Virus record (IMG/VR): IMGVR_UViG_3300023174_000042
Coordinates: 124,001 to 188,000 of that record
Length of the DNA: 64,000 nt
Direction: 5' to 3' (one strand)
A model generated the notes under the pieces. The model saw only the letters and a program-made list of their open reading frames with translations, searched no databases and was not told the DNA's origin. Position 1 is the first letter of the stretch. Every line of letters begins with the position of its first letter. The position numbers were made by a program, and so were the translations under genes. This document shows positions 6,540-28,497 of this stretch, one piece after another.

Positions 6540-7703
6540 TTATGGGGCCGCAACTACATTAGGGGGAAATATAATTTTTAAATTGTAATCAAAAGTTCCT
6601 ATCCCACCAACTGAAAAACTGTGAGTGTATAAATCTAATGTAGAAACACAAGGATCTCCACCAAAAGGAGCTCCCGATGTTTCATATATGAAAGTTCCTG
6701 TAAAATTTTCTCTAACATGGAAATAAACAACATTTCCAATAGGAACTTGAATTGATCCAAAATTCGTTAAGGTTGGGCAAATAGAAACCGAATTTGCGCT
6801 TAAAAGATTCCATGTCAATCCTACAGGGAATGGTTGAGTAGAAATGAAAGTTGAAGAAAATGCGTAATACACTCTATAATTTTGACTACCATATGAAGGA
6901 TCTAAACCAACATTTATATTCAAATATCCAAACTGATTTGTTTGTGTTGGTGTTGGTGTGGGAGTATTAGTTGGTGTGTTAGTTGGTGTGTTAGTTGGCG
7001 TTGGCGTGTTAGTTGGAGTCACAGTGTTTGTCGGGGTATTAGTTGGGGTTACGGTAGGTGTTTGTGTATTAGTTGGGGTTACGGTAGGTGTTTGTGTGTT
7101 AGTTGGAGTCACAGTTGGTGTAGTTGTGGGGGTAGGTGTTGTAGTGTTTGTAGGTGTATTTGTAGGTGTGTTAGTTGGTGTCACGGTTGGTGTCACGGTT
7201 GGGGTTGGTGTGTTAGTAGGTGTATTAGTTGGCGTTAAACTTAGTATTGGAATTGGAGTTAAAGTTGGTGTTGGGGATGGGAATGGTGTTGTGCAACAAT
7301 TATAATTTAATACATAACAATTATTGTAAGGTAAGGTGTCTGACAAATAACTTTCAGTAATGTTGATAAACAATTGTTCTCTGATTGGTAAAACTAATGT
7401 TCCCGTTTCATTTATAAATAAAAATTGTCCTTCATACCTACCAACTCTACTTGTGTCTTGTGGTGTAAATCTATAATAAACATAATATTCTGGAGAAGCA
7501 TTTGAGTTAACTTCTGTTTTTTCAACAAAACTTGCCGCCTGCGAATATATTTTTGGAATACCAGTATCGGTATCTATCATAGAAAAAAATATGGAAGAAG
7601 TCTCAATAAAAGACATCATTGACGGATAGTCTTCTATACCATCTTTTACAACCTGTAATTTCAAAAGAGGAAGCGTCGAGTTTTGACCTATAGTAAATTC
7701 CAT
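6540..7703 (-). CDS. Putative virion protein: BppU-like N-terminal domain, mucin-like Thr/Pro stalk, C-terminal beta domain
   Basis: N-terminus (F.I.QNSTLP.L...DT...GRYEGQF) is paralogous to the next gene; long TPT(N/V) repeats; TATTTAT at 7717-7723. Confidence 0.65.
6941..7280 (-). repeat. Coding low-complexity repeat (TPTN/TPTV)n
   Basis: Repeated gttggtgt-type units on the + strand encode about 110 aa of Thr/Pro. Confidence 0.9.
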
Positions 7704-7745
7704 TTAATCTTTTTCTATAAATACAACAAAAGACCATTTAGTGTC

Positions 7746-8786
7746 CTACGGACAAACACCACCAACACAGTTGTTTATACCACCTGTCACTGTTATATAG
7801 TTGTATGGTATTGTAAACGCCCCACAAAAACTTTGTGATCCATTAAATGGTAAAGTAATCGCGGTTGTATTACCATTACAATTTACATAAAGAGAGTTAA
7901 ATATATTATTTTGAGTTTTTGTATAGGTAAAGCATTTACATGGAAATGAAGTTCCACACTCATGTGAATAAATTACTTGACTATAATTACCAAATAATCC
8001 TGAGTATTGACCAACAAATACTATCGTATTAGGTGAGTATGAAACACCATTTCTAGATAAAATTCGAACCCAAAGACCATTTGTAGAAATAGCATAATTA
8101 TCAAAATTTGGTGAACTCCATAAAGTTTGACCGATAGTCAAGGCCGACATACTAGGAGTATAGGCAGTTACAAAAGCGGTTTCTTGTGAACACGCTAACG
8201 ATGCTGATCCAGAACCAAAAGTAATAACCCATTCTGTATATCCTGTTGGTTCAGGTCCGTGTGTTGTTGAAGTTGTTGTTACAGGTATACTTGTTGTTGA
8301 AGTGGTTGTTGGTGATATGGTCGATGTTGTTGTTGTAACAGGAGGGATTTGTGGTGGTGGAATTGGTTGAGATTTACAACAAGGATAGTCAACAACATAA
8401 CAACTTTGAAATTCAAAGTCGTTAATTATAAAACTATCAGTAACATTTACATATATTTCTTGATTCAAAGGTAAAACCAAAACTCCAGTATCGTTTCTAA
8501 ATAAAAATTGTCCTTTGTATCTTCCTGTTTGTTTTGTATCAAATGGTGTAAATTGATAATAAACATAGTATTGATCTTGTTCGCTAGAGTATAAGGGTTC
8601 TTTTTTTATTATACCGGCAGGTCTTGTTGTTATTTTTGGAATTCCAGTTTCGGTATTTACCATAGAAAAAAATATATCGGTCTCTTCTAAAAACCGCATA
8701 GATCTATCGTAATCAGATCTTCCATCTTTTATAACATTAATTTTTAATGTAGGAAGTGTAGAATTTTTCTTAATAAAGAACTCCAT
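7746..8786 (-). CDS. Putative virion protein, paralog of 6540..7703, with Thr-rich linker and Cys-rich tip
   Basis: Shared ~135-aa N-terminal domain; TTTTST linker; TATTTAT at 8800-8806. Confidence 0.65.
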   Translation of the reverse strand: MEFFIKKNSTLPTLKINVIKDGRSDYDRSMRFLEETDIFFSMVNTETGIPKITTRPAGIIKKEPLYSSEQDQYYVYYQFTPFDTKQTGRYKGQFLFRNDTGVLVLPLNQEIYVNVTDSFIINDFEFQSCYVVDYPCCKSQPIPPPQIPPVTTTTSTISPTTTSTTSIPVTTTSTTHGPEPTGYTEWVITFGSGSASLACSQETAFVTAYTPSMSALTIGQTLWSSPNFDNYAISTNGLWVRILSRNGVSYSPNTIVFVGQYSGLFGNYSQVIYSHECGTSFPCKCFTYTKTQNNIFNSLYVNCNGNTTAITLPFNGSQSFCGAFTIPYNYITVTGGINNCVGGVCP

Positions 8787-8812
8787 TTAATCTTTATTAA
8801 TAAATACTTGAA

Positions 8813-10480
8813 TTAAAATTCTTTTCTTAAATTGCCATCGTAGAAGTCAAATCGATTGTGTTCGGTTGGTGTCATAAGTAGAACACCAGCATGAATTCTT
8901 CCCTTAATTGTTTGTTTATAACAATGAGACATAAGAGTTTGTTCATAAGGAAATTGAAATTTTGTCTCTATATAACATTTGTAATTTCCTTCCTTTGACA
9001 AAAGAATTGGCCAATTCGATAGATATATTTCTCCTGTGGCATAAGGTATACCTTCGTAAGATTTTATGTTTTTAAACTCTAAATTTGGGGAATCAGGATC
9101 TTGTCCATGTCTTGGTAGATTTTGATTCATGGGCCAATGTGTTTTTCTAAACTCTTGATCTACATTATACCAAGACCATTGTTTTTCGTGACTACCATAA
9201 AATTCTGTAAAGTTAAGTTTCAAAAAATCAAATTCTTCCTTTTTGAATAATTGAAAAACTTTTTTATACAAATTTTTTGTTTTTCTATTAAAACCATTTT
9301 TACAAGTGTCGTCTTTACCATTGTAAAAAAACATATCATCCTCCAAAAAATAATAGTAATCCATATCAGATTCGTGAAAGTGTTCAGCAACAAAAACTCT
9401 TCCACCTGTAATTCCAATATTATCTTTTTTAATGTGTTCAAAACCATATTGTTCACACAATTCTTTATAATTCGGAGTGGTCGAAAGATCTGTAGAATTA
9501 TCTAACAAAAACTTTTTTGTTTTATGGATAAAATCAGAATCATACTCTAACATAGATGTTATTAATGTTTCAAATTGTTTTGGACTATTGAATGAAATTA
9601 CATATAAACCAACATCACCCGTTCTATTCTTTATTACTTTGTAATTTTTCTTTAAACTTTTAATTTCTACAGAATCGTTCTTAACATCTTCAAAAAATTT
9701 ATAAACCAAACCATTTGATTCAATTTCAACATAATCTGTAATTGTTGGATTGTTATAAAGTAGAATAGAAAACAAACTTTCTTCCGTTCCCATCAAACCT
9801 TTTTGTAATGTAGATTTCATCAAATTATAATATAGAGTATTCATTTGACGAATAACTTCTTTTGTTCCACCAAAAAAACCACCACGACAAACCTTGTCAA
9901 CTCTTGTTCCCGTTATTTCGGTCATCTTATCGATGTTGAATCCATGAATTTCACGATCTGCTTGATATGGAAAACAAATAAATAAAAAGTTGTCAGATAA
10001 TTTATCTATCTTATCTAAGACCTTATCGTTAGTTAAATAACCCATATGAACGGTGTTTGCTAAACCAGCGTCAATCCAATAAAGTTTTTCTGAATCAAAT
10101 TTATCCAAAAGAACCGCATCATGTAAAATAAACATTTTTGACATAACAAGTGGGTTATACATTTCTAATTTTGCTTGTGTTGAATCTTTTAACCAACCGG
10201 CCAAATTATACCATTTTGGGTTATTTCTAATGTTTTGAATTTGGTCAAAAAACTCACCATTTCTAAACCAACTTAGGTCTCTTAAAATAAATTGGGTGTT
10301 TTCTTCACTTCTTCTTTCTGTGACAAATTTTTCTAGTTCTTTGTCACCAAAAATTATCATATTACAATCAACTTGTAATAGTTGTTCAAATTTATTTAAG
10401 TAATGATCAAAAGACCTTGACCATCCTTCAGAAAGATTCCCTCTTCCAATATCCCATAAACCTGTTACTAATGTTATCAT
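8813..10480 (-). CDS. HtrL/YibB-family glycosyltransferase-like domain fused to a GT-A-like domain
   Basis: ITLVTGLWDIGR, YWIDAG, GGFFGG and GTEES motifs; second domain has ISFNSP...LEDD. Confidence 0.65.
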   Translation of the reverse strand: MITLVTGLWDIGRGNLSEGWSRSFDHYLNKFEQLLQVDCNMIIFGDKELEKFVTERRSEENTQFILRDLSWFRNGEFFDQIQNIRNNPKWYNLAGWLKDSTQAKLEMYNPLVMSKMFILHDAVLLDKFDSEKLYWIDAGLANTVHMGYLTNDKVLDKIDKLSDNFLFICFPYQADREIHGFNIDKMTEITGTRVDKVCRGGFFGGTKEVIRQMNTLYYNLMKSTLQKGLMGTEESLFSILLYNNPTITDYVEIESNGLVYKFFEDVKNDSVEIKSLKKNYKVIKNRTGDVGLYVISFNSPKQFETLITSMLEYDSDFIHKTKKFLLDNSTDLSTTPNYKELCEQYGFEHIKKDNIGITGGRVFVAEHFHESDMDYYYFLEDDMFFYNGKDDTCKNGFNRKTKNLYKKVFQLFKKEEFDFLKLNFTEFYGSHEKQWSWYNVDQEFRKTHWPMNQNLPRHGQDPDSPNLEFKNIKSYEGIPYATGEIYLSNWPILLSKEGNYKCYIETKFQFPYEQTLMSHCYKQTIKGRIHAGVLLMTPTEHNRFDFYDGNLRKEF

Positions 10481-10484
10481 TTTT

Positions 10485-11360
10485 TTAATTTAAGTTTTCT
10501 AAAATTTTATAAAAACTTTTTTCTGTTTTTGTTAATTCCAAAAGATCGACACCAGGTATGACATCTTCTTCATGCCACCAAATATCAAAATATAAAGAAG
10601 TAAACAAGTCTTGATTGTTGTAATATAAAAGTGACATAATATTTTCTTCTAAATAAAGTTCGTTTTCATTTAACAATACCTCATTTATTTTATCAATAAA
10701 TAAATCGCAAAATGTTTTCATTATATCTTTTTTACCACCAAAAAAACCTCCGATTATATGTCGATCACTATTATATTTAGAATAATATTTTTTTGGTAAT
10801 GTTGTAGACCAATAATTTTTTTTGTTGTCTTTAGCACAAACAACAATTTTATCTTTAGTAAAATCTATTAGATTATTTAAAAAGTTGTTATTAAAAAGTG
10901 AAGACTCAAAATATTTTTCCCAATATCCTTTTGTTTGGTCTAAATATTTAAAAGGTATTAAACCTGTATGTGAAAGTCCTGCATCAAACCAATATAAATG
11001 TTTTACATCATCAGTTAATTCATTCAAACACCAAACAAACTTTGAATATTGAATTTCATAACACCTATCTTTTAACACGACACTTGACACATCTTTTATT
11101 CTTTGGATGTGTTTGTGAAAATCACATCTTTGTAAATCAAATGTTTTAAATATTATTTGATTTTCATTAAAGTTATTTTGAACATAAAAAAAATCTTTCA
11201 GAATATCTATTTCACTAATACTAGTATAACAAACAAAAGTTGCGTTAGACATTTTTAATAAACTTCGAAGTGAATTTAAATAATGTCCTTGACGACTATC
11301 TCTACCCCCTAATTTAGTGTTGTATAAGTTTGAGTATATTGCTGTGATAATTTTTATCAT
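10485..11360 (-). CDS. HtrL/YibB-family glycosyltransferase-like protein
   Basis: QYSKF, YWFDAG, IIGGFFGG and LEENIMS motifs; paralog of the N-terminal half of 8813..10480. Confidence 0.65.
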   Translation of the reverse strand: MIKIITAIYSNLYNTKLGGRDSRQGHYLNSLRSLLKMSNATFVCYTSISEIDILKDFFYVQNNFNENQIIFKTFDLQRCDFHKHIQRIKDVSSVVLKDRCYEIQYSKFVWCLNELTDDVKHLYWFDAGLSHTGLIPFKYLDQTKGYWEKYFESSLFNNNFLNNLIDFTKDKIVVCAKDNKKNYWSTTLPKKYYSKYNSDRHIIGGFFGGKKDIMKTFCDLFIDKINEVLLNENELYLEENIMSLLYYNNQDLFTSLYFDIWWHEEDVIPGVDLLELTKTEKSFYKILENLN

Positions 11361-12601
11361 AAATTTCCAATAATTCTTTCACACCAATCTTTTGAAACGG
11401 AATGTGGCCAAACAACCCAATACGCAGGAACTTCTGTTGTATTAAACTCTCTCCATATTTTTCCGTAACCATCAGGATCATTTTTAATTCTTAAAATTTC
11501 GTTGGCGTCTGCGTCTTGTCTAAATAGTGTATTATTTTCTTTATCGTGAAAAGCAACAACCCAAAAATCGTAATCAGTTTCAGGAACACGATTTAGATCT
11601 AAGTCAATACAATGTTTGAATATGGTTGAAAATGAATTTTTCCATTCTTCTTCGGTTTTATAATCGTATGTGTTTGGTGGGTATTTTTTATCTATCGTTT
11701 CTTGTTGAATACCTCTTGTCTCAAACAATACGCCAGCATATTTTTCATAATCTCTTATGGTTCTTTCTGTTCCAAACCATTCTGAGTAATCTCCATTATA
11801 TTTTTCACCATCAACACCAAGTAATTGTCTGTTTTTAATATGACATGCGGTGTTTTTTAAATGCCATTCTTTATCTATATCCCATTGTTTAATTCTTCCT
11901 TTTCTTGTGTATTCATGCCAAATAACAACTTTATGTGGGTGAAATAAATCATATCCGTGAGTAAAGGCACGAACTGAAATAGAAATTTCTTCTCCGTGAA
12001 AATAAAATTCAGGATCGTGTTGAACTTCAGTTGAAAATTCACCAAGTGTAAAACAGAAGTGAGCGGAATAAAATCTTGCTGTTACAGGTTCTTTAAGTTC
12101 TTTCCATCCAGGAATTACTTCAGGTAAAAAAAATACAACACCTTCAGGTGTAAATCTATCAAAAGCCATTCTCCACGGCTCGGTAACTCTTCCTTGTGGG
12201 TCGTTTTCCGGATCAAAAGATGAAACATATCCTGTTAACAAAGGTTTTTTATGTCCTTTCTTTTGGAGTTGTTTAATCATCTTAATAAGAGTATCATCCC
12301 AATCTTTTTCAAATCTCATATGGGAATCAATTTGTAATGTATATTTTTCATTACCATACAATTGTTGAACTTGATGTCTTGCCCAACAAACACCTTTTGA
12401 GTCAACATCTAAGACATCAATAATTTTAAATCTTTTGTCATTTCTATATTTGTCAATATTAAAATCGTCTTCTGAATTATATTGATGACAAATACCAATT
12501 CTTAAATTATTTGGGTATTTTGAGTTTTCAATTAGGTTATCTAATGTTGGTTCTAATTGAGGGTCTCTAAACGATGCTATTTGAATAAAAATAGTATTCA
12601 T
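11357..12601 (-). CDS. GT60-family polypeptide/hydroxyproline GlcNAc-transferase (Gnt1/OGNT-like)
   Basis: IFIQIASFRDP, GVCWARH, LQIDSHMRF (DSH motif), FHGEEIS...RAFTHGYD, HEY. Confidence 0.8.
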   Translation of the reverse strand: MNTIFIQIASFRDPQLEPTLDNLIENSKYPNNLRIGICHQYNSEDDFNIDKYRNDKRFKIIDVLDVDSKGVCWARHQVQQLYGNEKYTLQIDSHMRFEKDWDDTLIKMIKQLQKKGHKKPLLTGYVSSFDPENDPQGRVTEPWRMAFDRFTPEGVVFFLPEVIPGWKELKEPVTARFYSAHFCFTLGEFSTEVQHDPEFYFHGEEISISVRAFTHGYDLFHPHKVVIWHEYTRKGRIKQWDIDKEWHLKNTACHIKNRQLLGVDGEKYNGDYSEWFGTERTIRDYEKYAGVLFETRGIQQETIDKKYPPNTYDYKTEEEWKNSFSTIFKHCIDLDLNRVPETDYDFWVVAFHDKENNTLFRQDADANEILRIKNDPDGYGKIWREFNTTEVPAYWVVWPHSVSKDWCERIIGNL

Positions 12602-19323: not shown

Positions 19324-19325
19324 CA

Positions 19326-20598: not shown

Positions 20599-23466
20599 TT
20601 AAGCGTAAACACCGTAAGCAGTTACTTTACCACCAGTAGATGGAGTGTAAGTAAATACTACGTTAACACCACCTGTGATGTTGTAGTCAACACCTGCTTC
20701 TTGTAACAATCCATTGTAATAGATTGCTTCAGAATCAGTTTTAACTGAACTAGCCAAAGTGAATGCTTTGTTTGTCCCGTTAACTAAACCAGAAACAGAT
20801 ACTTTTTTGAAATATTCGTTAGTGATTTTGTTTTCGATGCTGTTCAATCCAGTAACTACTTCAGAGAAAGAGTCAATTGCAGATAGATCAGTGTTTGATA
20901 ACAAGTAAGAAACTTCAGTAGACAAGGCAGTTTCTAAAGATGATTCTGCGTCTGTCGCTCTACTTGTCTCGTTGTTAATCTTAGTATTCAACATTGAAAC
21001 GGCATCATTAATTGCAGTATCCAATGAAATATCAGCACTTAATCTTGAACTTTCTTCAACAGAAACTTGAGTGTTGATTTTGTCATTCAATTGAACAAAC
21101 AATGAAGTGTCAGCAGTTTCTCTACTAGAGATTTCAACACCAATTTTGCTTTCCAATGAATACTCAACAGATTCTCTGATGCTTTGTTCAACAGTAACTC
21201 TTCGATCAAGTTCAATTTCAATTGAATTATCGGCAGATCTTCTTTCAGATGCTTCTGAATCAATGTATTGTACCAAAGATTGATCGGCATTTTGTCTGTC
21301 ATAAATTTCAGTTGAGATTGAAGAATCTAATTTAGTTTCTAATGAATTATCTTTAGCAATTCTTGAAGACTCTTCAGCATTCAAATTAAGACCAATAGAA
21401 GTAACCGCTGATAACAACGAATTGTCATTAGCCATATCAATGCTATTAACAAAAGAAACAATTTCTGCGAATTGATCTAAATCAACCGTTGATCCATCAA
21501 GGATAGTATCAATTCTTCCTGATTCTCTTGCGATTGAGTTTGTCAATGAAAGATCTGCGCTTTCTCTATTTGCAATTTCAGAAGAAATTTTAGAGTTAAT
21601 AGAAGTTTTAGCATCTGAAATTACAGATTCTAATGAACCATCATTAGAAACTCTTGATGAAACTTCTGAAGAAATAGCAGAAGATAATTTAGAGTCGATG
21701 CTGTTTTCTCTTACGATAGCCAAAGATTCTTTTGTAGAAACTGTAGTTTCGATAGAAGCAAAACCTCTTGATACTTCACCTTCAATAGAACCTTCAACAG
21801 ATGTGTGAAGTGAACAACACTCAGAAATTTCCGCCTCCAAAGAATTATCGGCAGCAACTCTGTCTGATTCTTCAACACTCACCATAGTAATTATGATGTT
21901 ACTTAATGCATCGGTTATAAATTGTTCTTTAGATTCTCTTGTTGACACTTCAGCTTCAAGACTAGCATTGAAAGCCGCGTCATACAATTCTCTAATAGAA
22001 GCTTCTACTGAAATATCATTTCTTAATGATTCCTCAACAGATTGAGCTCTTGCCTCTTCAGCATCTACATCAGCGATTCTGTTAGAAACTTCAGTAGCCA
22101 AGTTAGAAGATAATGTTGCCTCAGCAACCATAGCTCTCGATTCTTCAGCATCTACATCAGCGATTCTGTTAGAAATTTCTGCAGTTAAATTAGACGCAAT
22201 AGACGCTTCAGCTGCCATAGCTCTTGATTCTTCAGCATTAACATCAGCAATTCTGTTAGAAATTTCAGTTGACAAATTAGATGCGATAGAACCTTCAGCG
22301 GCGATTGCTCTTGATTCTTCTGCGTCAACATCAGCAATTCTGTCAGAAATTTCATTTGTTAACTTTGTAGAAATAGATGATTCAGCGGCGATTGCTCTTG
22401 CAATTTCTGTTGATACCGCCGCTTGTCTGTTAGCAGTTTCCAAAGATAGATTTTGAGAAATAACTGACTCAACTGACGTTGCTCTTGCTTCTTCAGCATC
22501 AACATCTAAACCTCTGTTTACGATTTCAGAAGATAAATCAGACGCGATAGAAAATTCTACCGACATCGCTCTTGATTTTTCTGTAGATACCGCTACTGAT
22601 GCTGTAGATGCCAAGGTAGTGATAGCATTGTTAATGTCACCATCGGCAGATTGGAAAGCAGAAACGATTTCAGTCAATGAATCTAACGCAGCAGGATCAA
22701 CGTTAGAAATAACAAAATCAATTTTTGTGTTCAACGATGAATCAGCAGCAATACGTGCAGATGCTTCAGAATTCAAATCAGTCGCTAATGAACCTTCGGC
22801 CAACTTTGCTCTTGACTCTTCAGCATCAACATCGGCGATTCTTGCAGATGTTTCAGAAGAAATTAAGTTAGACAATGAAGTTTCAGAAGAAATTGCTCTT
22901 GAACCTTCAGCATTTAAAGAAGTTTCTAATGATAAATCACCAGCAACTCTTGAAGACGCTTCAGTAGAAACAGCGTTTGTTCTGTTAACAACTTCAGAAG
23001 ACAAGTTAGAAGAAATAGTTGCTTCAGCAACCATTGCTCTTGATTCTTCAGCGTCAACATCAGCAGTTCTGTTTACGATTTCAGTCGACAAATCAGCAGC
23101 AACTGATTGGTCACCAACAACTCTCAAAGAAGCCTCAGTAGAAACAGCAATAGTTCTGTTTGTAATTTCTGATGCTAAGTCAAAAGCAACTGATGCGTCT
23201 CCAGAAATTCTTGCAACTGTTTCAGTAGAAACTGCGTTTGTTCTGTTAACAACTTCAGAAGATAAGTTTGATTCAAGTGATAAGTCTCCAGAAACTCTTG
23301 AAGAAGCCTCACTTGAAATGTTAGTTGATAAATTGCCTAACTCTGAGTTCACGTTAGTTAAACCAAACGCGATATCACTAGCAACAATACCAACCGGGGT
23401 TGTGATCGATGGACTCGATAATACTAAGTCCGATTGTAAGTCTAAAACTATTTTAGTAGTAGCCAT
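20599..23466 (-). CDS. Long coiled-coil fibre protein (tail fibre/whisker-like)
   Basis: 29-aa repeats (LSTEISNRIADVDAEESRAMAAEASIASN), three LD(S/Q)(L/F)xE(I/V)V knobs, and a C-terminal NGTNKAFTL...YYNGLLQ domain. Confidence 0.75.
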   Translation of the reverse strand: MATTKIVLDLQSDLVLSSPSITTPVGIVASDIAFGLTNVNSELGNLSTNISSEASSRVSGDLSLESNLSSEVVNRTNAVSTETVARISGDASVAFDLASEITNRTIAVSTEASLRVVGDQSVAADLSTEIVNRTADVDAEESRAMVAEATISSNLSSEVVNRTNAVSTEASSRVAGDLSLETSLNAEGSRAISSETSLSNLISSETSARIADVDAEESRAKLAEGSLATDLNSEASARIAADSSLNTKIDFVISNVDPAALDSLTEIVSAFQSADGDINNAITTLASTASVAVSTEKSRAMSVEFSIASDLSSEIVNRGLDVDAEEARATSVESVISQNLSLETANRQAAVSTEIARAIAAESSISTKLTNEISDRIADVDAEESRAIAAEGSIASNLSTEISNRIADVNAEESRAMAAEASIASNLTAEISNRIADVDAEESRAMVAEATLSSNLATEVSNRIADVDAEEARAQSVEESLRNDISVEASIRELYDAAFNASLEAEVSTRESKEQFITDALSNIIITMVSVEESDRVAADNSLEAEISECCSLHTSVEGSIEGEVSRGFASIETTVSTKESLAIVRENSIDSKLSSAISSEVSSRVSNDGSLESVISDAKTSINSKISSEIANRESADLSLTNSIARESGRIDTILDGSTVDLDQFAEIVSFVNSIDMANDNSLLSAVTSIGLNLNAEESSRIAKDNSLETKLDSSISTEIYDRQNADQSLVQYIDSEASERRSADNSIEIELDRRVTVEQSIRESVEYSLESKIGVEISSRETADTSLFVQLNDKINTQVSVEESSRLSADISLDTAINDAVSMLNTKINNETSRATDAESSLETALSTEVSYLLSNTDLSAIDSFSEVVTGLNSIENKITNEYFKKVSVSGLVNGTNKAFTLASSVKTDSEAIYYNGLLQEAGVDYNITGGVNVVFTYTPSTGGKVTAYGVYA

Positions 23467-23505
23467 GAAAAATTGTTTTTCAAGTTTAAAAAGTGTTCTT
23501 TACAC

Positions 23506-24002: not shown

Positions 24003-24788
24003 TTAATTGTATCGATATGAACAAGTAACTTTACTTGATTCAGGTGGCGATATGTTGAATGTTATAATTTTTCCGTTTATTGTATAATCATTATTTTCAC
24101 CAAAATCTTGTAATAAACCATTTAAATAAACATGCTCACTTCCTGTTTTTGGTGTTATACTTAATTCAAAAGCTTTGTTTATACCATCAACAGACCCTAT
24201 TGGATGTTCATGGTCAATAAAGTTTATTTCACTATAAGTTCTATATGAACAAAGTAACTTACTATTTGTTTTTGGAGGATTTTTAAATGTAATTGTTTTT
24301 CCACTTATTAAATAATCTAATTGGTCTCCCTTATCTTGTAAAAGACCATTATAATATAGATGTTCTGAGTTGAGTTCAGGGGTAAACCTTAAAAAAAATA
24401 TTTTGTTTACACTATCAACTGGTCCAGATATCAACTCCCTATCAATAAATGTTGATGAATTGACTCCTGGTATAATTAAATTGTTTGGTAAACTTTTTAC
24501 AATATCTAATTGAGATGATGTCAAAAAGAAAATTTCTTCCCAATCCGTAAGTTCAAAAGACCAAAAAATATTTTTTAACTTAAAAAAACGAAGACCACCT
24601 TCGATTCCGACAATCATTCCAGGTCTTCTTCTGTCGTAGGAAATCAAGTTGAGGTCCGATTCTTGATCAACATTTCTAAGACCATCAATACCATATAGCG
24701 GGTCTATAACCGCATATGTGTCAAGAGTGTCCATTGGTGAAATGAAGCCCATAATTCCAACACCACCAACTCTACTAAAATCGGACAT
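24003..24788 (-). CDS. Putative virion protein with two tandem copies of the fibre C-terminal domain
   Basis: Two G.VD..NK.F.L...P...SEH.Y.NGLLQD.G...DY.I.GK.ITF repeats, homologous to the C-terminus of 20599..23466. Confidence 0.7.
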   Translation of the reverse strand: MSDFSRVGGVGIMGFISPMDTLDTYAVIDPLYGIDGLRNVDQESDLNLISYDRRRPGMIVGIEGGLRFFKLKNIFWSFELTDWEEIFFLTSSQLDIVKSLPNNLIIPGVNSSTFIDRELISGPVDSVNKIFFLRFTPELNSEHLYYNGLLQDKGDQLDYLISGKTITFKNPPKTNSKLLCSYRTYSEINFIDHEHPIGSVDGINKAFELSITPKTGSEHVYLNGLLQDFGENNDYTINGKIITFNISPPESSKVTCSYRYN

Positions 24789-24814: not shown

Positions 24815-26305
24815 TTATTCACATAACCATACGTCAACACTAGCAGAAGTTGAAACATATGATCTATATACAGAATAAATAGTGGTATTTCCTAAATTGT
24901 CAATTAAACTTACGTCAGGTTTAGTTATTATTGGAATAACATTTCCATTACATCCCCAATTACTATTTCTAAATATTGAAGGTTGTTTACTTGTAGTTGG
25001 AATTAAAATATAAACATAACCACTTCCAGACACCACATTTAAATGTAAATTAGTGGTTTCGAAGGTTTGAACGTTATTTATAAAATTTTCGTCACCAATA
25101 TCAAAATTGACTTTTGATGATTTACCGAAATAAATTGTTGGTATAATAATAGGAGTTGTTGTTGGTGTTACTGTTGGGGTTGGTGTATTAGTTGGTGTAT
25201 TTGTCGGTGTTGTTGTAGGCGTATTAGTTGGTGTATTTGTCGGTGTTGTTGTAGGCGTATTAGTTGGAGTGTTTGTCGGTGTGGTTGTAGGTGTATTAGT
25301 TGGTGTTGGGGTATTAGTTGGGGTAATTGTCGGCGTTGGAGTATTAGTTGGAGTTGGGGTTTGTGAAGCACCAACACTTGGGGTCACCGTTGGGGTTGGT
25401 GTATTAGTTGGAGTTGGTGTATTAGTAGGTGTAGTTGTAGGTGTTGGAGTATTAGTAGGTGTATTAGTTGGTGTTGGAGTATTAGTTGGGGTAATTGTCG
25501 GTGTTGGTGTATTGGTTGGTGTATTTGTAGGTGTATTCGTTGGAGTTGGTGTGGGTGTTGGTGTTGGCAAAACTTTAATTGCTTTATCGACTACAAAATT
25601 TGTTTGAATGTTAGGATGGTCAGATTTTATGTTTTGCACAATAACGTCTTCTTTAACTTCATCAAAATCCATATCTAATGTAATCATCAAACTTTCCGAC
25701 ATGAAACCTTTTTTGATTGTTATTTCTTTTGGTATTGTAATTTTTTCATCTGACAAATCTTTTAAAACAACATCGAAAGAAATATTTATATCGTGAACTA
25801 ATACTTTGTTGATATTAACATTTGACATTACAATTACAGAACCTGGCATAATTTCAACAGATATCGAAACAATCAAATTAGGTAATGGTGTAATACAAGG
25901 ATTCCAAGTAGGTGTTGGCGTAGGTGTTAAACTAATTGTAGGTGTTGGCGTAGGTGTGGAAGTAGATGTCGGAGTTGGGCTTGGTAGTTTACATGGGTCT
26001 AATGTAGGTGTAGGAGTGTTTGTCGGTGTTGGTGTCGGTGTTAAAGTTCTTGTAGGACTTGGTGTTGGCGTAGGTGTCGGTGTAGGTCTTGGGACGTTTA
26101 AAAAATATGGACAATTTGCGTTTATCGGTTTAATTGTATATGTTCCGTAGATTTCTCTTGGCGGATATAAAAGATGAGGTTCAAATAAAAATGGTAATGT
26201 TATCTGGTCAAAGTTTAATACAACATCATCATTATCCGGTTTGAATAAGACTTCTGCCAATTCACCATCATAAAAAACACTTTTTATTAATATATTTTGG
26301 TTCAT
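24815..26305 (-). CDS. Putative virion protein with two mucin-like Thr/Pro tracts
   Basis: PTPTPT tract of about 60 aa and TPTN tract of about 140 aa separating globular domains. Confidence 0.7.
25150..25570 (-). repeat. Coding (TPTN/TPTT)n repeat
   Basis: Includes near-exact 36-bp duplications (gtattagttggtgtatttgtcggtgttgttgtaggc). Confidence 0.9.
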
Positions 26306-26310
26306 TTTTT

Positions 26311-28497
26311 TTATGTATTAATAATTGTGTATGTGAAATCATTAGGGAAACATGTTGATAAATCACAATTTGGACAATCAGGATCAAACATAAAAAATGT
26401 GTCCCTTAATAATTTGAAATTGTGTTTTACTTCAGGAGAAGACAATGGTTCGGTGTAAAATCTAAATTGAGATATTGCCCCATCAAAAGTTCCTGCAAAA
26501 TTTTCTTCTAATAATATATGAGTTTTTAGTTTATTAAGCGATGTGTTGTTTAGAATATTTTCAGGGAAACATTCTGGATCTTGTATATATAATCCTTGTG
26601 TGGTTGCTGTGCAAGAAGATAATGTTAAATTTTCGTGAAGTCCTTGCGTTCCCCCACCCCACGAAATATTAAAAGGAACACCAACTTGTTTTTCTTTATC
26701 GGTATTTAATCCACGAGGTATTACTTCTTCAAAATCTTCTATTGTGTAAAATATGCGACCATTTATATAAATCTTTAATCGACCCATTCTAAACTTTGTG
26801 TCATCTAACCATCTTTGATTCAATTGGACAAGGGTTACGCTCAAAGGAACTTCATAACCATTTGTGTAAGGAGGTGCAATTAATGACACATCGTTATTTG
26901 CCAAGTTTTGAAGAAGTTCAACTCTTGTTATGTCATCTAATCCACCAAACCATTTTAAGTCGCAATAATCTAAATAAGTATATCTTTCCCAAACAACGTT
27001 TATTAAAAACCAATGTCTAAAATTTAACCAATTTGGATTTGTTTTCAAACAATATGGATAAATTGGTGGTGTGCAAATATCCACAATCGTATATCCTGTG
27101 GTATATGTTTGTCCTGTAACACAAGTTCCCGTTGTAATACATTCACCAGTAAGTTTAATTGCTCTTACACCAATACCAGGGTTATGTGGATCACCACACA
27201 ATCTAAACGAAATGTTATTTGATAACGCATCCCATTTTGGATCTTTTTCACAAGTGTCTTCTACTGATGAAAAAATTGTCGATGGACTCGGTGGTGGACA
27301 TCCGCACGTATCGCAACCACAATTAGGACAAGAGGTGCAACATGGAGGTGTTGGGTCACAGACTATTGTTGTGGGATATGTATCACAAGGAACGGTTGGT
27401 GTGGGAGTTGGTGTTGGAGTAGGAGTTGGAACAATTATAGAAGAACAAACGTGTTGAAAACACATCCACCCACAAGTTTCACAAGGATCTAAATTACAAC
27501 CACACCCACAAGTTAATTTAGTTTCAGGATTTCCTTTGCACAAATTACATCCGTAATTTACATGAGGATCATAAACACCGCCAATTGGTCTTGGGGGATA
27601 TACGTATATACATCTACTATTTGTGATATCGTAATCACAGCAAGCACAAGTTTCTTCACAAGTTAATTCTGATGTCACCCTTTTATAACTTGGGTCACAT
27701 TTTGGAGATCCATCGGCGTAATGATAAAATTTATTTTCCGCCCTTGTTCCCATATAAAAAAATGTGTTTTTATTATTTGGGTATATTTGATTTAATGTTG
27801 TGTATCCTGGAGGTGGCGTATATTCATCAACAAACCTTGGGTTTAATAACATTTCAACAGACCACCCTTTATTCATTCGTTCTGGTAAAATGTCATAGTC
27901 ATAACCAAATAATTTATAAAATCCTTGATAAAAACCTCCATAAAGTTCAACATATCTTCCAAAATCAGGACTGAACTTTGAAACCATTTGATATGTTGTA
28001 TATGCAGGAATCCCCGAAAAAATGTGATTAGATGGAACGTTTGTTGTTGTTTGAATAAACTTCATTCGTCTATCATAATAAAATCTATCAAATTTTTCTG
28101 TGTCATTAAATAATCCATTGGTAAAGTTTAAACTATCTCCTTTAATTCTAAAAGTTAATCCATTGTCAATTCCTGTGAGACCAACATCACATGTTGTTCC
28201 TGCACTAAAACAACTAAAATTCAAATCATCAGGTTGATAATAGTTTTCTGAAACAATTACGTTATTATAATTGTAATCACCATAGTTTAATGTTAGATTT
28301 TGTGTTGTTAAGGGGCTATTAAGATTAAGAGATATTGGTAATTTTTTTCCATTATCAATACCGATAATGTAAGGTGAGAACACAACTTCTTGGTTAAAAT
28401 CAACTTCATCAGATGCCAAAGACATATCTTGCCCGTCATAAATGACTTGCATTTTTAATTTTTGATAATTATATTGATTTATATTTTGGTATGACAT
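26311..28497 (-). CDS. Putative virion protein, LamG-like scaffold with a Cys-rich/PT insertion
   Basis: [15 protein letters not shown] and [15 protein letters not shown]; about 30 Cys in the central insert. Start set at MSYQN, downstream of TATTTAT at 28509-28515. Confidence 0.65.

What the first reader, a model, noticed from the sequence alone, without database searches (positions are those of the whole stretch)
6540..28497. Candidate phage-encoded virion protein O-glycosylation (glycocalyx) system with co-located acceptors
Seen: at least five late, virion-type genes with long Thr/Pro, Thr-rich or Gly-Thr-Ser tracts (6540, 7746, 16252, 24815, 26311), plus a Ser-rich coiled-coil fibre. These are interleaved with five putative glycosyltransferase genes (GT60, two HtrL-like, GT4-Aah/TibC fusion, DUF2827). 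Known: GT60 and Aah/TibC are both protein-acceptor O-glycosyltransferase families. Inference: the phage initiates two chemically distinct O-glycan types on its own fibres and could elongate them with the 31-46 kb operon. The result would be a mucin-like coat for protease resistance, adhesion or mimicry, analogous to giant-virus fibril glycosylation but in a tailed phage.
Basis: partly seen in the sequence, partly recalled or inferred. Interest (0 to 1): 0.92.

Follow-up and report, generated by a model that had tools for sequence, protein, structure and literature searches.

The report
Phage fibre genes paired with protein glycosyltransferases
A giant freshwater phage keeps three kinds of sugar-adding enzymes, all from families linked to protein glycosylation, right beside three kinds of repeat-rich tail-fibre genes, which suggests (but does not prove) that it sugar-coats its own fibres.

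Summary
The window is part of a 272-kb T4-like jumbo phage contig from IMG/VR. Positions 6.5-28.5 kb carry Thr/Pro-tract proteins, a proline-free collagen-like (G-T-S)n fibre and a Ser-rich coiled-coil fibre. Among them lie a GT60 enzyme, two HtrL-like enzymes, a GT4-TibC/Aah fusion and a DUF2827 enzyme.

Comparison with relatives sharpens the idea into three enzyme-fibre pairs:
- GT60 plus HtrL is flanked by Thr/Pro-tract genes. In 27 of 49 dereplicated relatives the gene just upstream carries a tract, up to 1,219 residues long. A hypervariable cassette of further glycosyltransferases and methyltransferases sits between GT60 and HtrL.
- The TibC-like gene is followed by a collagen-like gene at +1 or +2 in 18 of 40 dereplicated loci.
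- A J-domain gene and DUF2827 stay next to the Ser-rich fibre gene even after relocation.

The GT60/HtrL/o291 trio also occurs in Xanthomonas phage XacN1, whose virions stain as glycoproteins. No glycan has been shown here. Acceptors, donor sugars and any role of the 31-47 kb sugar operon are inferred. The TibC-like domain lacks one heptose-binding arginine. Some relatives have the enzymes without adjacent tracts.

Verdict: plausible, partly supported, and a new variant of known phage virion glycosylation.

The parts
6540..7703 (-). Candidate acceptor 1 (387 aa). It has a BppU_N-like Ig-fold N-domain, a 121-aa (TPTxT)n tract (DNA 6930-7292) and a C-terminal globular domain.
   Evidence: Translation and tract. 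N-domain: ESM Atlas BppU_N lead; AF2 model with pLDDT 73; Foldseek hits to phage baseplate chains 9m8o_P and 4v96_AB; BFVD hits to BppU, minor-tail and tail-fibre proteins. The tract is encoded by imperfect 12-30 bp tandem repeats.
7746..8786 (-). Candidate acceptor 2 (346 aa). It has the same BppU_N-like N-domain, a 44-aa Thr/Ser/Pro tract (DNA 8241-8372) and a Cys-containing C-terminal module.
   Evidence: Orthologues lie between HtrL and PolB in most relatives.
8813..10480 (-). Two-domain glycosyltransferase (555 aa): an HtrL/YibB-like N-domain plus a GT2-like C-domain.
   Evidence: PF09612 at 9.9e-17. The TIGR02192 hit is below its equivalog cut-off. The C-domain resembles viral GT2-like clusters. 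It is 41% identical over its full length to XacN1 ORF330. An HtrL-like neighbour of GT60 is found in 29 of 80 bacterial loci.
10485..11360 (-). Second HtrL-like protein (291 aa).
   Evidence: No Pfam hit. BLASTP to the N-domain of 8813-10480 gives E 2e-7 with shared LYWxDAGL and GGFFGG motifs. It is homologous to XacN1 ORF332 at 3.9e-21.
11357..12601 (-). GT60-family glycosyltransferase (414 aa). It is the proposed initiating polypeptide O-glycosyltransferase.
   Evidence: PF11397 at 2.6e-69. D92-x-H94, H229 and E204/E205 are invariant in 25 diverse homologues. It has no membrane segment. It is a near-core gene: 242 IMG/VR relatives, the 80 kept being 68-100% identical.
12663..12965 (-). Stand-alone 'o100' beta-sandwich domain (100 aa). 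In relatives this domain heads proteins carrying T/P tracts of up to 1,219 aa, encoded directly upstream of GT60.
   Evidence: AF2 model with pLDDT 78. No significant PDB match.
13012..14010 (-). ConA/LamG-like lectin-fold protein (332 aa). Probably a distal fibre or binding module.
   Evidence: PF13385 at 1.8e-11. PHROG 'virion structural protein' at 2.8e-8.
14065..16275 (+). Fusion enzyme (736 aa): a GT4-type domain (about residues 1-345) plus a TibC/Aah-type O-glycosyltransferase domain (about residues 395-727).
   Evidence: PF00534; TibC 4rap at 5.6e-66; TIGR04414 at 282 bits against a cut-off of 200. Asp-110, Thr-226, Lys-230, Trp-305 and the four iron-finger Cys are conserved, while Arg-286 is Val and Pro-300 is Gly.
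16252..18681 (-). Candidate acceptor 3 (809 aa): a collagen-like tail fibre with 145 proline-free G-(T/S)-(S/N/D) triplets and a CBM5/12 module. It is convergent with the TibC-like gene and overlaps its 3' end by 24 bp.
   Evidence: PF01391 at 1.6e-62 and CBM_5_12. Tail-fibre PHROGs down to 1e-75. Triplet composition. Collagen-like genes lie at +1 or +2 of TibC in relatives.
18772..19323 (+). Small J-domain-like protein (183 aa, HPD motif present). It is always paired with DUF2827.
   Evidence: Weak PF00226 hit at 1.2e-3, below cut-off. It is adjacent to DUF2827 in 13 of 14 loci.
19326..20525 (+). DUF2827 protein with a predicted GT-B glycosyltransferase fold. The listed ORF starts at 19245, but relatives and the Atlas record start at Met-28 (19326).
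   Evidence: PF10933 at 1.2e-96. The Atlas model of the nearest DUF2827 cluster resembles GT4-type GT-B enzymes at TM 0.62-0.69. DUF2827 is reported next to trimeric autotransporter adhesins in bacteria.
20599..23466 (-). Candidate acceptor 4 (955 aa): a Ser-rich (17.6%) repetitive coiled-coil-type fibre, convergent with DUF2827.
   Evidence: It is adjacent to DUF2827 in 10 of 14 loci and within three genes in 12 of 14, including loci where the block has moved.
24003..24788 (-). 261-aa protein with two copies of a motif also found at the C-terminus of the Ser-rich fibre. Probably a fibre-associated structural protein.
   Evidence: Weak PHROG hits to virion structural and tail-fibre families. 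Its position after the Ser-rich fibre is conserved.
24815..26305 (-). Candidate acceptor 5 (496 aa), with two T/P tracts of 75 and 149 aa (DNA 25886-26110 and 25133-25579).
   Evidence: 12-60 bp tandem repeats. Orthologues with tracts occur in relatives.
26311..28521 (-). Cys-rich 736-aa protein with a short (PT)6 linker (DNA 27361-27453). It is a weak acceptor candidate.
   Evidence: No Pfam or PHROG family found.
31284..47487 (+). Sugar-metabolism and glycosyltransferase operon. It holds GT1-like, GT2 (four genes), GT4, GT11, GT10 and GT92-like enzymes, an FkbM methyltransferase, a hexapeptide acyltransferase, a DegT fragment and GDP-mannose 4,6-dehydratase. It is interrupted by an exonuclease-like gene, dUTPase and PhoH. 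Any link to the fibres is unproven.
   Evidence: No ORF in the whole window has two or more membrane-like segments, so no Wzx, Wzy or WaaL-type protein is present.

Best explanation
The phage encodes soluble, cytoplasmic protein O-glycosyltransferases. These modify its own repeat-rich tail appendages before or during assembly. I propose three cognate enzyme-acceptor pairs.

1. GT60 attaches a first sugar to Thr in the (TPTxT)n tracts. By analogy with characterised GT60 enzymes this would be a HexNAc; that is inferred. The acceptors are BppU-anchored fibre proteins and, in relatives, giant o100-headed mucin-like proteins. The two HtrL-like enzymes, and in relatives a hypervariable cassette of GT2, GT10, GT25 and GT34 enzymes and methyltransferases, would extend and decorate this sugar.

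2. The TibC-like domain attaches a sugar to Ser/Thr of the proline-free (G-T-S)n collagen-like fibre, and the fused GT4 domain adds a second sugar.

3. DUF2827, together with its J-domain partner, modifies the Ser-rich coiled-coil fibre.

Shown: the gene families, catalytic-residue conservation, conserved synteny, and the lack of membrane or export machinery. Inferred: the acceptors, the sugars, the timing, and the biological pay-off, which could be stiffening or stabilising fibres, protease protection, or antigenic and adhesive diversity.
For: Enzyme families:
- GT60, PF11397 at 2.6e-69. Its characterised members are polypeptide alpha-GlcNAc transferases acting on mucin-type Ser/Thr domains (PMC8724618).
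- The TibC-like domain passes NCBI's equivalog cut-off. It keeps the catalytic Asp-110 and the iron finger.
- DUF2827 has a GT-B-like fold. It is independently proposed to glycosylate trimeric autotransporter adhesins.

Synteny:
- In 49 dereplicated GT60 loci, a T/P/S tract occurs in the -1 gene in 27 of 49, in the +1/+2 genes in 0-1 of 49, and in the +3 to +5 genes in 15-28%.
- Tract ORFs within -5 to +6 genes versus farther away give p = 4e-6. At 80% dereplication (17 loci) p is still 6e-4.
- Tract ORFs are 13 times denser than around the capsid gene.
- Collagen-like genes lie at +1 or +2 of TibC in 18 of 69 ORFs, against 12 of 426 elsewhere, p = 1e-9.
- The J-domain/DUF2827/Ser-rich-fibre trio is kept after relocation.

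Operon layout: o100, GT60, o291, HtrL and both T/P proteins are co-oriented with intergenic gaps of at most about 65 bp.

Bacterial loci: tract ORFs are enriched within 4 genes of GT60 (22/507 versus 5/404, p = 0.006). HtrL-like genes accompany GT60 in 29 of 80 loci. PqqD peptide-binding domains lie between GT60 paralogues.

XacN1 has the GT60/HtrL/o291 trio beside its baseplate and giant fibre genes. Its virions give PAS-positive glycoprotein bands.

No candidate acceptor has an N-terminal signal-like segment, and no enzyme has a membrane segment. This fits cytoplasmic modification.
Against: - There is no direct chemical evidence for any glycan.
- T/P tracts are also ordinary flexible linkers.
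- The enrichment partly reflects that both gene classes sit in the hypervariable fibre module, and the loci are phylogenetically related.
- GT60 is near-core and as conserved as the capsid protein. In contig 3300020220_000008, GT60 is 77% identical and MCP 83%. The tract proteins are hypervariable by contrast.
- Some relatives (L101, L103, L113) and XacN1 have GT60 and HtrL with no sizeable tract nearby. The essential acceptor might therefore be something else.
- L090-L092 have the o100 gene without GT60 beside it.
- In this window itself, the gene directly upstream of GT60 has no tract.
- The TibC-like domain has Val in place of the sugar-binding Arg-286. In TibC, the R286A mutant loses or largely loses activity.
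- HtrL/YibB is named from an LPS-core locus.
Confidence: 0.55

Rival explanations
1. The glycosyltransferases remodel the host's surface polysaccharides (LPS, O-antigen or capsule) during infection. This would block superinfection or prevent progeny re-adsorbing to lysing cells. The T/P, collagen-like and Ser-rich repeats would be unmodified structural linkers that merely share the variable fibre module.
For: - Comparative work on jumbo phages predicted this role for phage glycosyltransferase clusters (PMC7824862).
- HtrL/YibB takes its name from the E. coli LPS-core region (one search lists the protein YibB models).
- The 31-47 kb operon, with GDP-mannose dehydratase, GT10/GT11 fucosyltransferase-like enzymes and GT2s, looks like an O-antigen-type toolkit.
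- Variable glycosyltransferase content between conserved flanks is typical of polysaccharide loci.
- Peripheral glycosyltransferases that act on lipid-linked acceptors need no membrane segments.
Against: - No initiating phosphoglycosyl transferase, flippase, polymerase or ligase is present. No ORF in the 64 kb has two or more membrane-like segments.
- GT60 and TibC/Aah have only protein acceptors in characterised members.
- The enzymes are co-oriented and tightly packed with fibre genes, and each keeps a specific fibre neighbour through rearrangements.
- XacN1 virions carry glycoproteins.
Confidence: 0.2
2. Some or all of these enzymes glycosylate phage DNA as hypermodified bases, as in T4-like phages, to evade restriction. 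The neighbouring repeats would be irrelevant.
For: - The genome is T4-like: gp23, gp20 and gp21 homologues.
- A dUTPase/dCTP-deaminase-like gene and an exonuclease gene sit inside the sugar operon.
- DNA alpha-glucosyltransferase clusters appear among distant feature-level look-alikes of DUF2827, at score 0.92.
- Diverse phage glycosyltransferases are known to hypermodify DNA (cited in PMC12619734).
Against: - No hydroxymethylase or thymidylate-synthase-like gene was found among the window's ORFs scanned with Pfam. Only 64 of 272 kb was visible.
- GT60, TibC and DUF2827 have no known DNA-modifying members.
- The specific, conserved enzyme-fibre adjacencies are not explained.
Confidence: 0.08
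3. Only one of the three pairs is real, most likely GT60/HtrL with virion proteins. The true acceptor would not be the T/P tracts but another conserved virion protein, for example the large Ser/Thr/Gly-rich insertion domain of the major capsid protein. The tracts would be bystanders.
For: - GT60 is near-core and about as conserved as the capsid protein, while tract proteins come and go.
- XacN1 has the trio without large tracts nearby.
- The capsid protein has an insertion of about 270 aa rich in S, T, G, N and Cys.
Against: - The sharp positional peaks of tract genes at -1 and at +3 to +5 of GT60.
- The recurrence of tract genes next to GT60 in unrelated bacterial phyla.
Confidence: 0.15

Closest known systems
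Virion O-glycosylation in mycobacteriophages (Freeman et al. 2023; I saw it only as cited in PMC12619734)
   Same: Phage-encoded glycosyltransferases next to structural genes, with glycans on virion proteins made in the cytoplasm.
   Different: In mycobacteriophages the acceptors are the C-termini of capsid and tail-tube subunits, and the phages are small siphoviruses of Actinobacteria. Here the candidate acceptors are long internal repeat tracts of fibres. The enzymes are GT60, TibC-like and DUF2827 types, and nothing has been shown experimentally. I could not read the primary paper.
Xanthomonas jumbo phage XacN1: ORF334/ORF328 glycosyltransferases and PAS-positive virion proteins (PMC5852040)
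   Same: It has the same GT60 (47% identity), the same two-domain HtrL enzyme (41% over the full length) and the o291 homologue, next to DNA polymerase and the baseplate/giant-fibre genes. Its virions contain glycoproteins.
   Different: No large T/P tract lies nearby; the longest is 43 aa, in the 3,313-aa ORF325. A carbamoyltransferase is inserted, and there is no TibC-like or DUF2827 gene in the region examined. The glycoproteins were not identified or linked genetically to the enzymes.
Bacterial autotransporter heptosyltransferases (BAHT: TibC, AAH) acting on TibA and AIDA-I (PMC4358343)
   Same: Homologous catalytic domain at 5.6e-66, above the equivalog cut-off. The catalytic Asp, three of four sugar-binding residues and the 4-Cys iron finger are present. 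The enzyme is cytoplasmic and acts on a Ser-rich repetitive fibre-like adhesin encoded next to it.
   Different: There is no autotransporter. The neighbour is a collagen-like (G-T-S)n fibre. Arg-286 is Val in 34 of 48 phage homologues and Arg in only 2. The domain is fused to a GT4 domain, and in relatives to methyltransferases. The donor sugar is unknown.
GT60 polypeptide alpha-GlcNAc transferases that start mucin-type O-glycans in Dictyostelium and Trypanosoma cruzi (PMC8724618)
   Same: The same Pfam/CAZy family, and Thr/Pro-rich mucin-like repeats as the putative acceptor.
   Different: The eukaryotic enzymes are Golgi membrane proteins or the cytoplasmic Skp1-hydroxyproline enzyme. The phage protein is soluble and prokaryote-type, and belongs to a large uncharacterised bacterial and phage branch (4,481 representatives).
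DUF2827 genes next to trimeric autotransporter adhesins in Burkholderia, Veillonellales and Pasteurellales (bioRxiv 10.64898/2026.01.22.700529)
   Same: The same family, next to a long trimeric-fibre-type gene, cytoplasmic, and proposed to be a protein glycosyltransferase.
   Different: Here the neighbour is a phage Ser-rich fibre, with an obligatory J-domain partner gene. Neither system has been tested.
Glycosylated collagen-like and fibril proteins of spores and giant viruses: Bacillus anthracis BclA and Mimivirus fibrils (from my own knowledge, not checked here)
   Same: Collagen-like G-X-Thr repeats or surface fibrils carrying O-glycans made by dedicated, co-encoded enzymes.
   Different: Different enzyme families and organisms. 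The phage repeats contain no proline at all.

Membership tests
CAZy GT60 / Pfam PF11397 (polypeptide alpha-N-acetylglucosaminyltransferase family) | Sequence match to the family profile above the curated threshold | tested here: met
   234.8 bits against a cut-off of 21, E 2.6e-69.
CAZy GT60 / Pfam PF11397 (polypeptide alpha-N-acetylglucosaminyltransferase family) | GT-A type metal-binding D-x-H motif plus a distal His. That this is the expected motif for GT27/GT60 enzymes comes from my own knowledge. | tested here: met
   D92, H94 and H229 are invariant in 25 homologues of 34-50% identity.
CAZy GT60 / Pfam PF11397 (polypeptide alpha-N-acetylglucosaminyltransferase family) | Transfers GlcNAc from UDP-GlcNAc to Thr, Ser or Hyp of a polypeptide | not testable with these tools
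   Only genomic context bears on this: tract genes next to GT60, PqqD neighbours, and no solved structure found by sequence.
BAHT (TibC/Aah autotransporter O-heptosyltransferases, TIGR04414) | Match to the equivalog model above cut-off and to the TibC structure sequence | tested here: met
   282.1 bits against 200. 4rap_A at E 5.6e-66 over TibC residues 49-380.
BAHT (TibC/Aah autotransporter O-heptosyltransferases, TIGR04414) | Catalytic base Asp-110 and the iron finger Cys-339/342/358/370 | tested here: met
   All are conserved in the window protein. Across 48 phage homologues, Asp is present in 48/48 and the Cys in 46-48/48.
BAHT (TibC/Aah autotransporter O-heptosyltransferases, TIGR04414) | All four heptose-binding residues: Thr-226, Lys-230, Arg-286 and Trp-305 | tested here: not met
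   Thr, Lys and Trp are kept. Arg-286 is Val-630 here, and Val in 34 of 48 phage homologues with Arg in only 2. In TibC, R286A abolished or largely reduced activity.
BAHT (TibC/Aah autotransporter O-heptosyltransferases, TIGR04414) | Acceptor is the beta-helical passenger of a type V autotransporter encoded nearby | tested here: not met
   There is no autotransporter in the window. The conserved neighbour is a collagen-like fibre gene.
DUF2827 (PF10933) | Profile match. A GT-B fold and a fibre or adhesin neighbour are features proposed in a preprint, not established. | tested here: met
   E 1.2e-96 over the full profile. The nearest cluster's model resembles GT4-type GT-B enzymes at TM 0.62-0.69. 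The Ser-rich fibre is adjacent in 10 of 14 loci.
HtrL/YibB (PF09612; TIGR02192 equivalog) | Pfam family membership versus equivalence to E. coli YibB | tested here: inconclusive
   Pfam 61.9 bits against 24.1 is met. The equivalog model gives 72.5 bits against 264.9, which is not met. The protein has the domain but is not a YibB orthologue. The second copy (10485-11360) is detectable only pairwise.
Collagen triple-helix repeat proteins (PF01391) | Uninterrupted G-X-Y periodicity. Classical collagens also have Pro/Hyp-rich X and Y positions. | tested here: inconclusive
   Periodicity is met: 145 triplets, E 1.6e-62. Proline is 0% across 50 lineage proteins, with X = Thr 74% and Ser 18%, and Y = Ser 53% and Asn 38%. 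Whether a triple helix forms is not testable here.
Phage virion glycosylation systems (mycobacteriophage type) | Glycan demonstrated on virion proteins and dependent on phage glycosyltransferases | not testable with these tools
   There is only indirect support from XacN1 PAS staining.

The most novel reading that the evidence does not exclude
An abundant, uncultured lineage of freshwater jumbo phages builds a genuine 'glycocalyx' on its tail appendages, using three separate cytoplasmic protein-glycosylation systems. Each system is dedicated to one repeat chemistry:
- GT60/HtrL on mucin-like (TPTxT)n stalks up to about 1,200 residues long.
- A TibC-like enzyme, possibly with a changed donor sugar, on proline-free (G-T-S/N)n collagen-like fibres of up to 833 triplets. 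Their triple helix would depend on Thr/Ser glycosylation for stability.
- DUF2827 plus a J-domain chaperone on Ser-rich coiled-coil fibres.

The hypervariable glycosyltransferase and methyltransferase cassette between GT60 and HtrL would make the virion glycan as polymorphic as a bacterial O-antigen. If so, this would also give the first function for the large prokaryotic GT60 branch and for DUF2827.
Probability: 0.2. Interest if true: 0.9.

Novelty: new variant of a known kind. Interest (0 to 1): 0.72.

Why it matters
Glycosylated phage virions are documented in only a few cases, and their enzymes and acceptors are mostly unknown. This locus offers concrete, separately testable enzyme-acceptor pairs in a lineage that is very common in lakes: at least 597 capsid-gene relatives and 242 GT60 relatives in IMG/VR.

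If the pairs hold, several things follow:
- They would assign functions to three poorly understood families: prokaryotic GT60, phage TibC-like enzymes and DUF2827. DUF2827 and GT60 also sit beside adhesins and T6SS spikes in bacteria.
- They would explain how proline-free collagen-like and 1,000-residue Thr/Pro stalks can be stable.
- They would reveal a glycan-based layer of phage surface diversity, relevant to adsorption, to grazing or protease resistance, and to engineering phage surfaces.

If they fail, the same genes become candidates for host-envelope remodelling by lytic jumbo phages, which is also poorly documented.

Tried and rejected
- Megablast of the polymerase gene against 50,697 phage records found nothing. 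Protein searches show only distant kin: Salinibacter and Nostoc phages for PolB at about 24%, and an uncultured 484-kb phage, Microcystis phage Mel-JY01 and Flavobacterium phages for the capsid protein at about 42%.
- I could not establish whether this lineage is the published 'moraphage' group. The paper lists no IMG identifiers.
- A sequence search of the PDB gave no structure for GT60.
- The three encoding-contig look-ups for distant GT60 homologues returned only 5-9 kb contigs. These were useful for the PqqD and HtrL neighbours but too short for tract statistics.
- The o100 domain model matched nothing significant in the PDB.
- The T4-type late-promoter motif TATAAATA is enriched (30 against 10.7 expected), but it is not upstream of the capsid gene. 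I drew no inference about timing.
- The primary mycobacteriophage glycosylation paper is not held.
- I considered host-mediated periplasmic O-glycosylation of the tracts and rejected it, because the candidate acceptors have no signal-like N-termini.
- I considered a Skp1-type hydroxyproline route for GT60. No prolyl hydroxylase was found in the window.
- XacN1 ORF328 ('GT9') is not a TibC homologue by BLASTP.
- Caveats on my statistics. ORF calling was crude (longest ORFs). The tract threshold (at least 70% T+P+S in 30-aa windows, at least 30 aa covered) is arbitrary. Loci are related to each other even after dereplication. The capsid-region control is a conserved core module, so part of the enrichment reflects module type.

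Full report
WHAT THE WINDOW IS

The 64-kb window is part of IMG/VR contig IMGVR_UViG_3300023174_000042, which is 272,576 bp long. It has about 30% G+C.

It carries a T4-type head module:
- portal gp20 (PF07230, 2.6e-66);
- prohead protease (S77);
- major capsid protein gp23 (PF07068, 2.8e-73).

It also carries a family-B DNA polymerase. No close relative exists among 50,697 deposited phage genomes. The nearest capsid proteins, at about 42% identity, are from an uncultured 484-kb phage, Microcystis phage Mel-JY01 and Flavobacterium phages.

The lineage is very common in metagenomes, judging by IMG/VR sample numbers mostly lake samples. There are at least 597 capsid-gene relatives and 242 GT60 relatives in IMG/VR, on contigs up to 321 kb. 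It may overlap the recently described freshwater 'moraphages', which have Bacteroidota hosts and four core glycosyltransferase orthogroups (PMC12619734). I could not verify that.

CHECK OF THE OBSERVATION

- 6540-7703 encodes a 387-aa protein with a 121-aa (TPTxT)n tract containing 57 Thr and 31 Pro.
- 7746-8786 encodes a paralogue with a 44-aa Thr/Ser/Pro tract.
- 24815-26305 has two T/P tracts, of 75 and 149 aa.
- 26311-28521 has only a short (PT)6 linker.
- 16252-18681 is a collagen-like protein of 145 G-X-Y triplets (Pfam Collagen 1.6e-62) with a CBM5/12 module and strong tail-fibre PHROG matches.
- 20599-23466 is a 955-aa, 17.6%-Ser repetitive fibre.

The tracts are encoded by imperfect 12-60 bp tandem repeats.

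The five enzyme calls are also right:
- GT60, PF11397 at 2.6e-69.
- HtrL_YibB at 9.9e-17, in the 555-aa protein. Its C-terminal half looks like a second, GT2-like domain.
- A second, Pfam-silent HtrL-like protein, which aligns to the first at E 2e-7.
- A GT4 + TibC/Aah fusion.
- DUF2827 at 1.2e-96.

THE ENZYMES IN DETAIL

TibC-like domain. Its C-half matches the TibC crystal-structure sequence at 5.6e-66. It exceeds NCBI's equivalog cut-off for 'autotransporter strand-loop-strand O-heptosyltransferase', at 282 against 200 bits. I mapped the residues defined by the TibC structure paper (PMC4358343) onto the protein:
- Conserved: the catalytic Asp-110; three of the four sugar-binding residues (Thr-226, Lys-230, Trp-305); and all four iron-finger cysteines.
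- Changed: Arg-286 is Val, and the stereoselectivity residue Pro-300 is Gly.
- Across 48 dereplicated phage homologues, Asp and Trp are invariant and the cysteines nearly so. Arg-286 is present in only 2, while Val is present in 34.

The phage clade is therefore a genuine BAHT relative with a systematically altered donor pocket. Heptose should not be assumed as its sugar.

GT60. It has an invariant D-x-H motif and a distal His across 25 homologues of 34-50% identity. It has no membrane segment. It belongs to a very large, uncharacterised prokaryotic and viral branch, with 4,481 cluster representatives and at least 576 bacterial loci.

DUF2827. The Atlas model of the nearest DUF2827 cluster resembles GT4-type GT-B enzymes at TM 0.62-0.69. 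The likely true start of the gene is Met-28, at position 19326.

ARE THE REPEAT PROTEINS VIRION PARTS?

Evidence that they are:
- The collagen-like protein matches tail-fibre families.
- The shared 130-aa N-domain of the two T/P proteins at 6540 and 7746 is an Ig-like sandwich (AF2, pLDDT 73).
  - Its best PDB match is a baseplate chain of phage NF5 (E 3.7e-4, TM 0.49). The TP901-1 baseplate protein BppU also appears.
  - In the viral model library, 94 hits at E <= 1e-3 include BppU-domain proteins, minor tail proteins, tail fibres and baseplate components.
  - The ESM Atlas gave the same lead.
- The LamG-like protein hits a 'virion structural protein' PHROG.
- None of the candidates has a signal-like N-terminus.

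These are most likely baseplate-anchored appendages made in the cytoplasm. The TM-scores are modest, so this remains an inference.

COMPARATIVE EVIDENCE: THREE ENZYME-FIBRE PAIRS

I fetched 80 GT60-anchored, 80 TibC-anchored, 80 capsid-anchored and 14 DUF2827-anchored viral loci, and analysed ORFs with scripts.

Pair 1: GT60 and T/P tracts.
- The conserved order is: [o100-headed protein] - GT60 - variable genes - HtrL - [BppU-headed T/P proteins] - PolB.
- In 49 loci dereplicated at 97% GT60 identity:
  - the gene immediately upstream of GT60 carries a T/P/S tract in 27, with tracts up to 1,219 residues;
  - the two genes downstream almost never do (0-1 of 49);
  - a second peak lies at +3 to +5.
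- The upstream proteins are 'beads on a string'. They have an N-terminal o100 beta-sandwich, small Cys-containing modules, and long (TPTxT)n linkers at 27-40% Thr.
- Tract ORFs are 13-fold denser here than around the capsid gene, at 11.6 against 0.87 per 100 kb.
- Clustering near GT60 survives dereplication down to 80% identity, with p = 6e-4.
- Between GT60 and HtrL, relatives carry 0-8 extra genes that fall into 55 sequence clusters. The sampled ones are GT25, GT2, GT34 and GT10 enzymes and sugar-type methyltransferases. This is a hypervariable glycan cassette between conserved flanks.

Pair 2: TibC and collagen-like fibres.
- In 40 dereplicated TibC loci, a collagen-like ORF sits at +1 in 10 of 37 and at +2 in 8 of 32.
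- Upstream, only 3 of 245 ORFs are collagen-like (p = 1e-9). This includes homologues of only 39-56% identity.
- The arrays are extraordinary. They reach 833 triplets with no proline at all. Position X is Thr 74% and Ser 18%. Position Y is Ser 53%, Asn 38% and Asp 6%.

Pair 3: DUF2827 and the Ser-rich fibre.
- DUF2827 is restricted to a sub-clade of 14 loci.
- It is always beside the small J-domain gene (13 of 14).
- It is adjacent to the Ser-rich fibre in 10 of 14 and within three genes in 12 of 14. This holds where the block has moved next to PolB or elsewhere.
- It mirrors the independent report that bacterial DUF2827 genes sit next to trimeric autotransporter adhesins and are candidate adhesin glycosyltransferases.

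EVIDENCE FROM OUTSIDE THE LINEAGE

- Among isolated phages, GT60 occurs only in four Xanthomonas and Stenotrophomonas jumbo phages.
- In XacN1 the GT60 (47% identity), the full two-domain HtrL enzyme (41%) and the o291 homologue lie together, next to the DNA polymerase, baseplate wedge genes and a 3,313-aa fibre-like ORF.
- The XacN1 authors detected at least two PAS-stained virion glycoproteins and attributed them to the phage's glycosyltransferases (PMC5852040).
- In bacterial genomes an HtrL-like gene accompanies GT60 in 29 of 80 loci.
- Tract ORFs are enriched within four genes of GT60, at 22/507 against 5/404 (p = 0.006). Immediate-upstream examples occur in Bacteroidota, Acidobacteriota, Alphaproteobacteria, Planctomycetota and Verrucomicrobiota.
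- In two metagenomic contigs, a PqqD-type peptide-binding domain lies between GT60 paralogues.
- In Burkholderiales, GT60 sits in type VI secretion clusters near VgrG spikes that carry T/P/S tracts.
- A TibC-like domain fused to an FkbM methyltransferase follows a structural gene in Microcystis phage Mel-JY01.

MOST LIKELY MECHANISM

I rate this at confidence about 0.55. Soluble enzymes modify the phage's own appendages in the cytoplasm.
1. GT60 starts O-glycans on Thr of the T/P tracts. The HtrL-like enzymes, and in relatives the variable cassette, extend and methylate them.
2. The TibC-like domain starts a glycan on the Ser/Thr-rich collagen-like array, and its fused GT4 domain adds a second sugar.
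3. DUF2827, with a J-domain helper, modifies the Ser-rich fibre.

What is shown: gene identity, catalytic-residue conservation, gene order and its conservation, and the absence of export or lipid-carrier machinery. What is inferred: acceptors, sugars, timing and benefit.

A plausible structural benefit is that glycosylation stiffens the T/P stalks and stabilises proline-free triple helices. This rests on my own knowledge of glycosylated Thr in invertebrate cuticle collagen and of BclA, and was not checked here.

WHAT SPEAKS AGAINST IT

- No chemistry has been done.
- T/P tracts are common plain linkers.
- Both gene classes live in the same hypervariable module, so adjacency is partly expected.
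- GT60 is near-core and about as conserved as the capsid protein. The acceptors are volatile.
- Relatives L101, L103 and L113, and XacN1, have the enzymes without nearby tracts. L090-L092 have o100 without GT60 beside it.
- In this very window the gene directly upstream of GT60 is a bare 100-aa o100 domain.
- The Arg-286 loss leaves the TibC-like donor open.

RIVALS

- Host-surface polysaccharide remodelling, as proposed for jumbo-phage glycosyltransferase clusters (PMC7824862). This remains the best reading for the 31-47 kb operon. Against it, no ORF in the window has two or more membrane-like segments.
- DNA hypermodification. This is a T4-like phage with a dUTPase inside the operon, but no hydroxymethylase was seen in the window.
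- A different virion acceptor, such as the capsid protein's S/T-rich insertion of about 270 aa.

NOVELTY

Phage virion glycosylation is known in mycobacteriophages and was proposed for XacN1. The general idea is therefore not new.

Four things are new:
- the specific enzyme families, none of which has been tied to phage structural proteins;
- the one-enzyme-one-repeat-class pairing;
- the scale of the putative acceptors, with 1,200-residue mucin-like tracts and 833-triplet proline-free collagen-like arrays;
- the polymorphic glycan cassette.

I class it as a new variant of a known kind, with interest 0.72.

Noticed in passing
window 7-2151 (+): A 714-aa fusion protein with a complete Fe/Mn superoxide dismutase (Sod_Fe_N 1.8e-21, Sod_Fe_C 1.1e-41) embedded between unknown N- and C-terminal regions. 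It is conserved next to the adaptor-like gene in relatives.
   Followed up: no
window 56236-58143 (-), residues about 110-380: The gp23-type major capsid protein carries an insertion of about 270 aa, rich in Ser, Thr, Gly, Asn and Cys and absent from the Pfam gp23 core match. It could be a surface domain and an alternative glycosylation target.
   Followed up: partly
L028, L033, L060, L024, L031, L044, L061, L068 (genes directly upstream of GT60); window 7746-8786 C-terminus: Small modules of about 45 aa recur between T/P linkers. Their pattern is roughly C-x-C ... Y-x-D/N-C-x-G ... C, and they have no family assignment. They could be binding domains of the mucin-like proteins.
   Followed up: no
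L089, L093, L099, L101, L102 (collagen-like ORFs next to TibC): The collagen-like arrays reach 566-833 triplets and are dominated by G-T-S and G-T-N. Runs of G-T-N-G-T create N-G-T sequons. N-glycosylation by some other enzyme is therefore not excluded.
   Followed up: no
L263, L283, L290, L293, L295, L303 (Burkholderiales chromosomes): GT60 homologues lie inside type VI secretion clusters (TssF, ImpA, IcmF), next to VgrG spikes with T/P/S tracts and Rhs proteins. The GT60 could modify the spike or could be a secreted effector.
   Followed up: partly
L242 2490-3613; L243 3849-4987: PqqD (a RiPP-recognition-type peptide-binding domain) and ScmC-family genes lie between two GT60 paralogues, with HtrL alongside in L243. 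This hints at glycosylated-peptide pathways.
   Followed up: no
window 19245-19325: The listed DUF2827 ORF probably starts at Met-28 (19326). Relatives are 399-403 aa, and the Atlas record starts there. This removes the overlap with the J-domain gene.
   Followed up: yes
window 6958-7305 (+), 25269-25607 (+), 22619-23551 (+): Long antisense ORFs, with Gly/Val repeats for example, are shadows of the T/P and Ser-rich repeats on the opposite strand. They are not likely genes.
   Followed up: partly
window 53955-54467 (+) and 55445-56167 (-): Two endonuclease VII / HNH-like genes flank the region just upstream of the capsid gene. They may be homing endonucleases.
   Followed up: no
window 32502-33832 (+): A PolB-exonuclease-like gene and a dUTPase/dCTP-deaminase-like gene are inserted between glycosyltransferase genes of the sugar operon. 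PhoH sits further along at 43238-43975.
   Followed up: no
whole window: The T4 late-promoter-like octamer TATAAATA occurs 30 times against 10.7 expected. Sites include 20-40 nt upstream of the TibC-fusion gene (14037) and the J-domain gene (18730), but none upstream of the capsid gene.
   Followed up: partly
L325 4750-8430 (Microcystis phage Mel-JY01): A 1,226-aa protein annotated 'methyltransferase FkbM' ends in a TibC-like domain that is 49% identical to the window's. It follows a 'structural protein' gene, and a 639-aa cytidylyltransferase-like gene lies nearby. This is a culturable system for testing the TibC-like enzymes.
   Followed up: no
L244-L248 (MAG contigs labelled Saprospiraceae, Bacteroidia, Melainabacteria): The most similar 'bacterial' GT60 hits (64-67% identity) are on MAG contigs of 5 to 230 kb. 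At least L246 has phage-like gene order, with a T/P protein, GT60 and HtrL. They may be phage contigs binned with a Bacteroidota host, which is a weak host clue.
   Followed up: no
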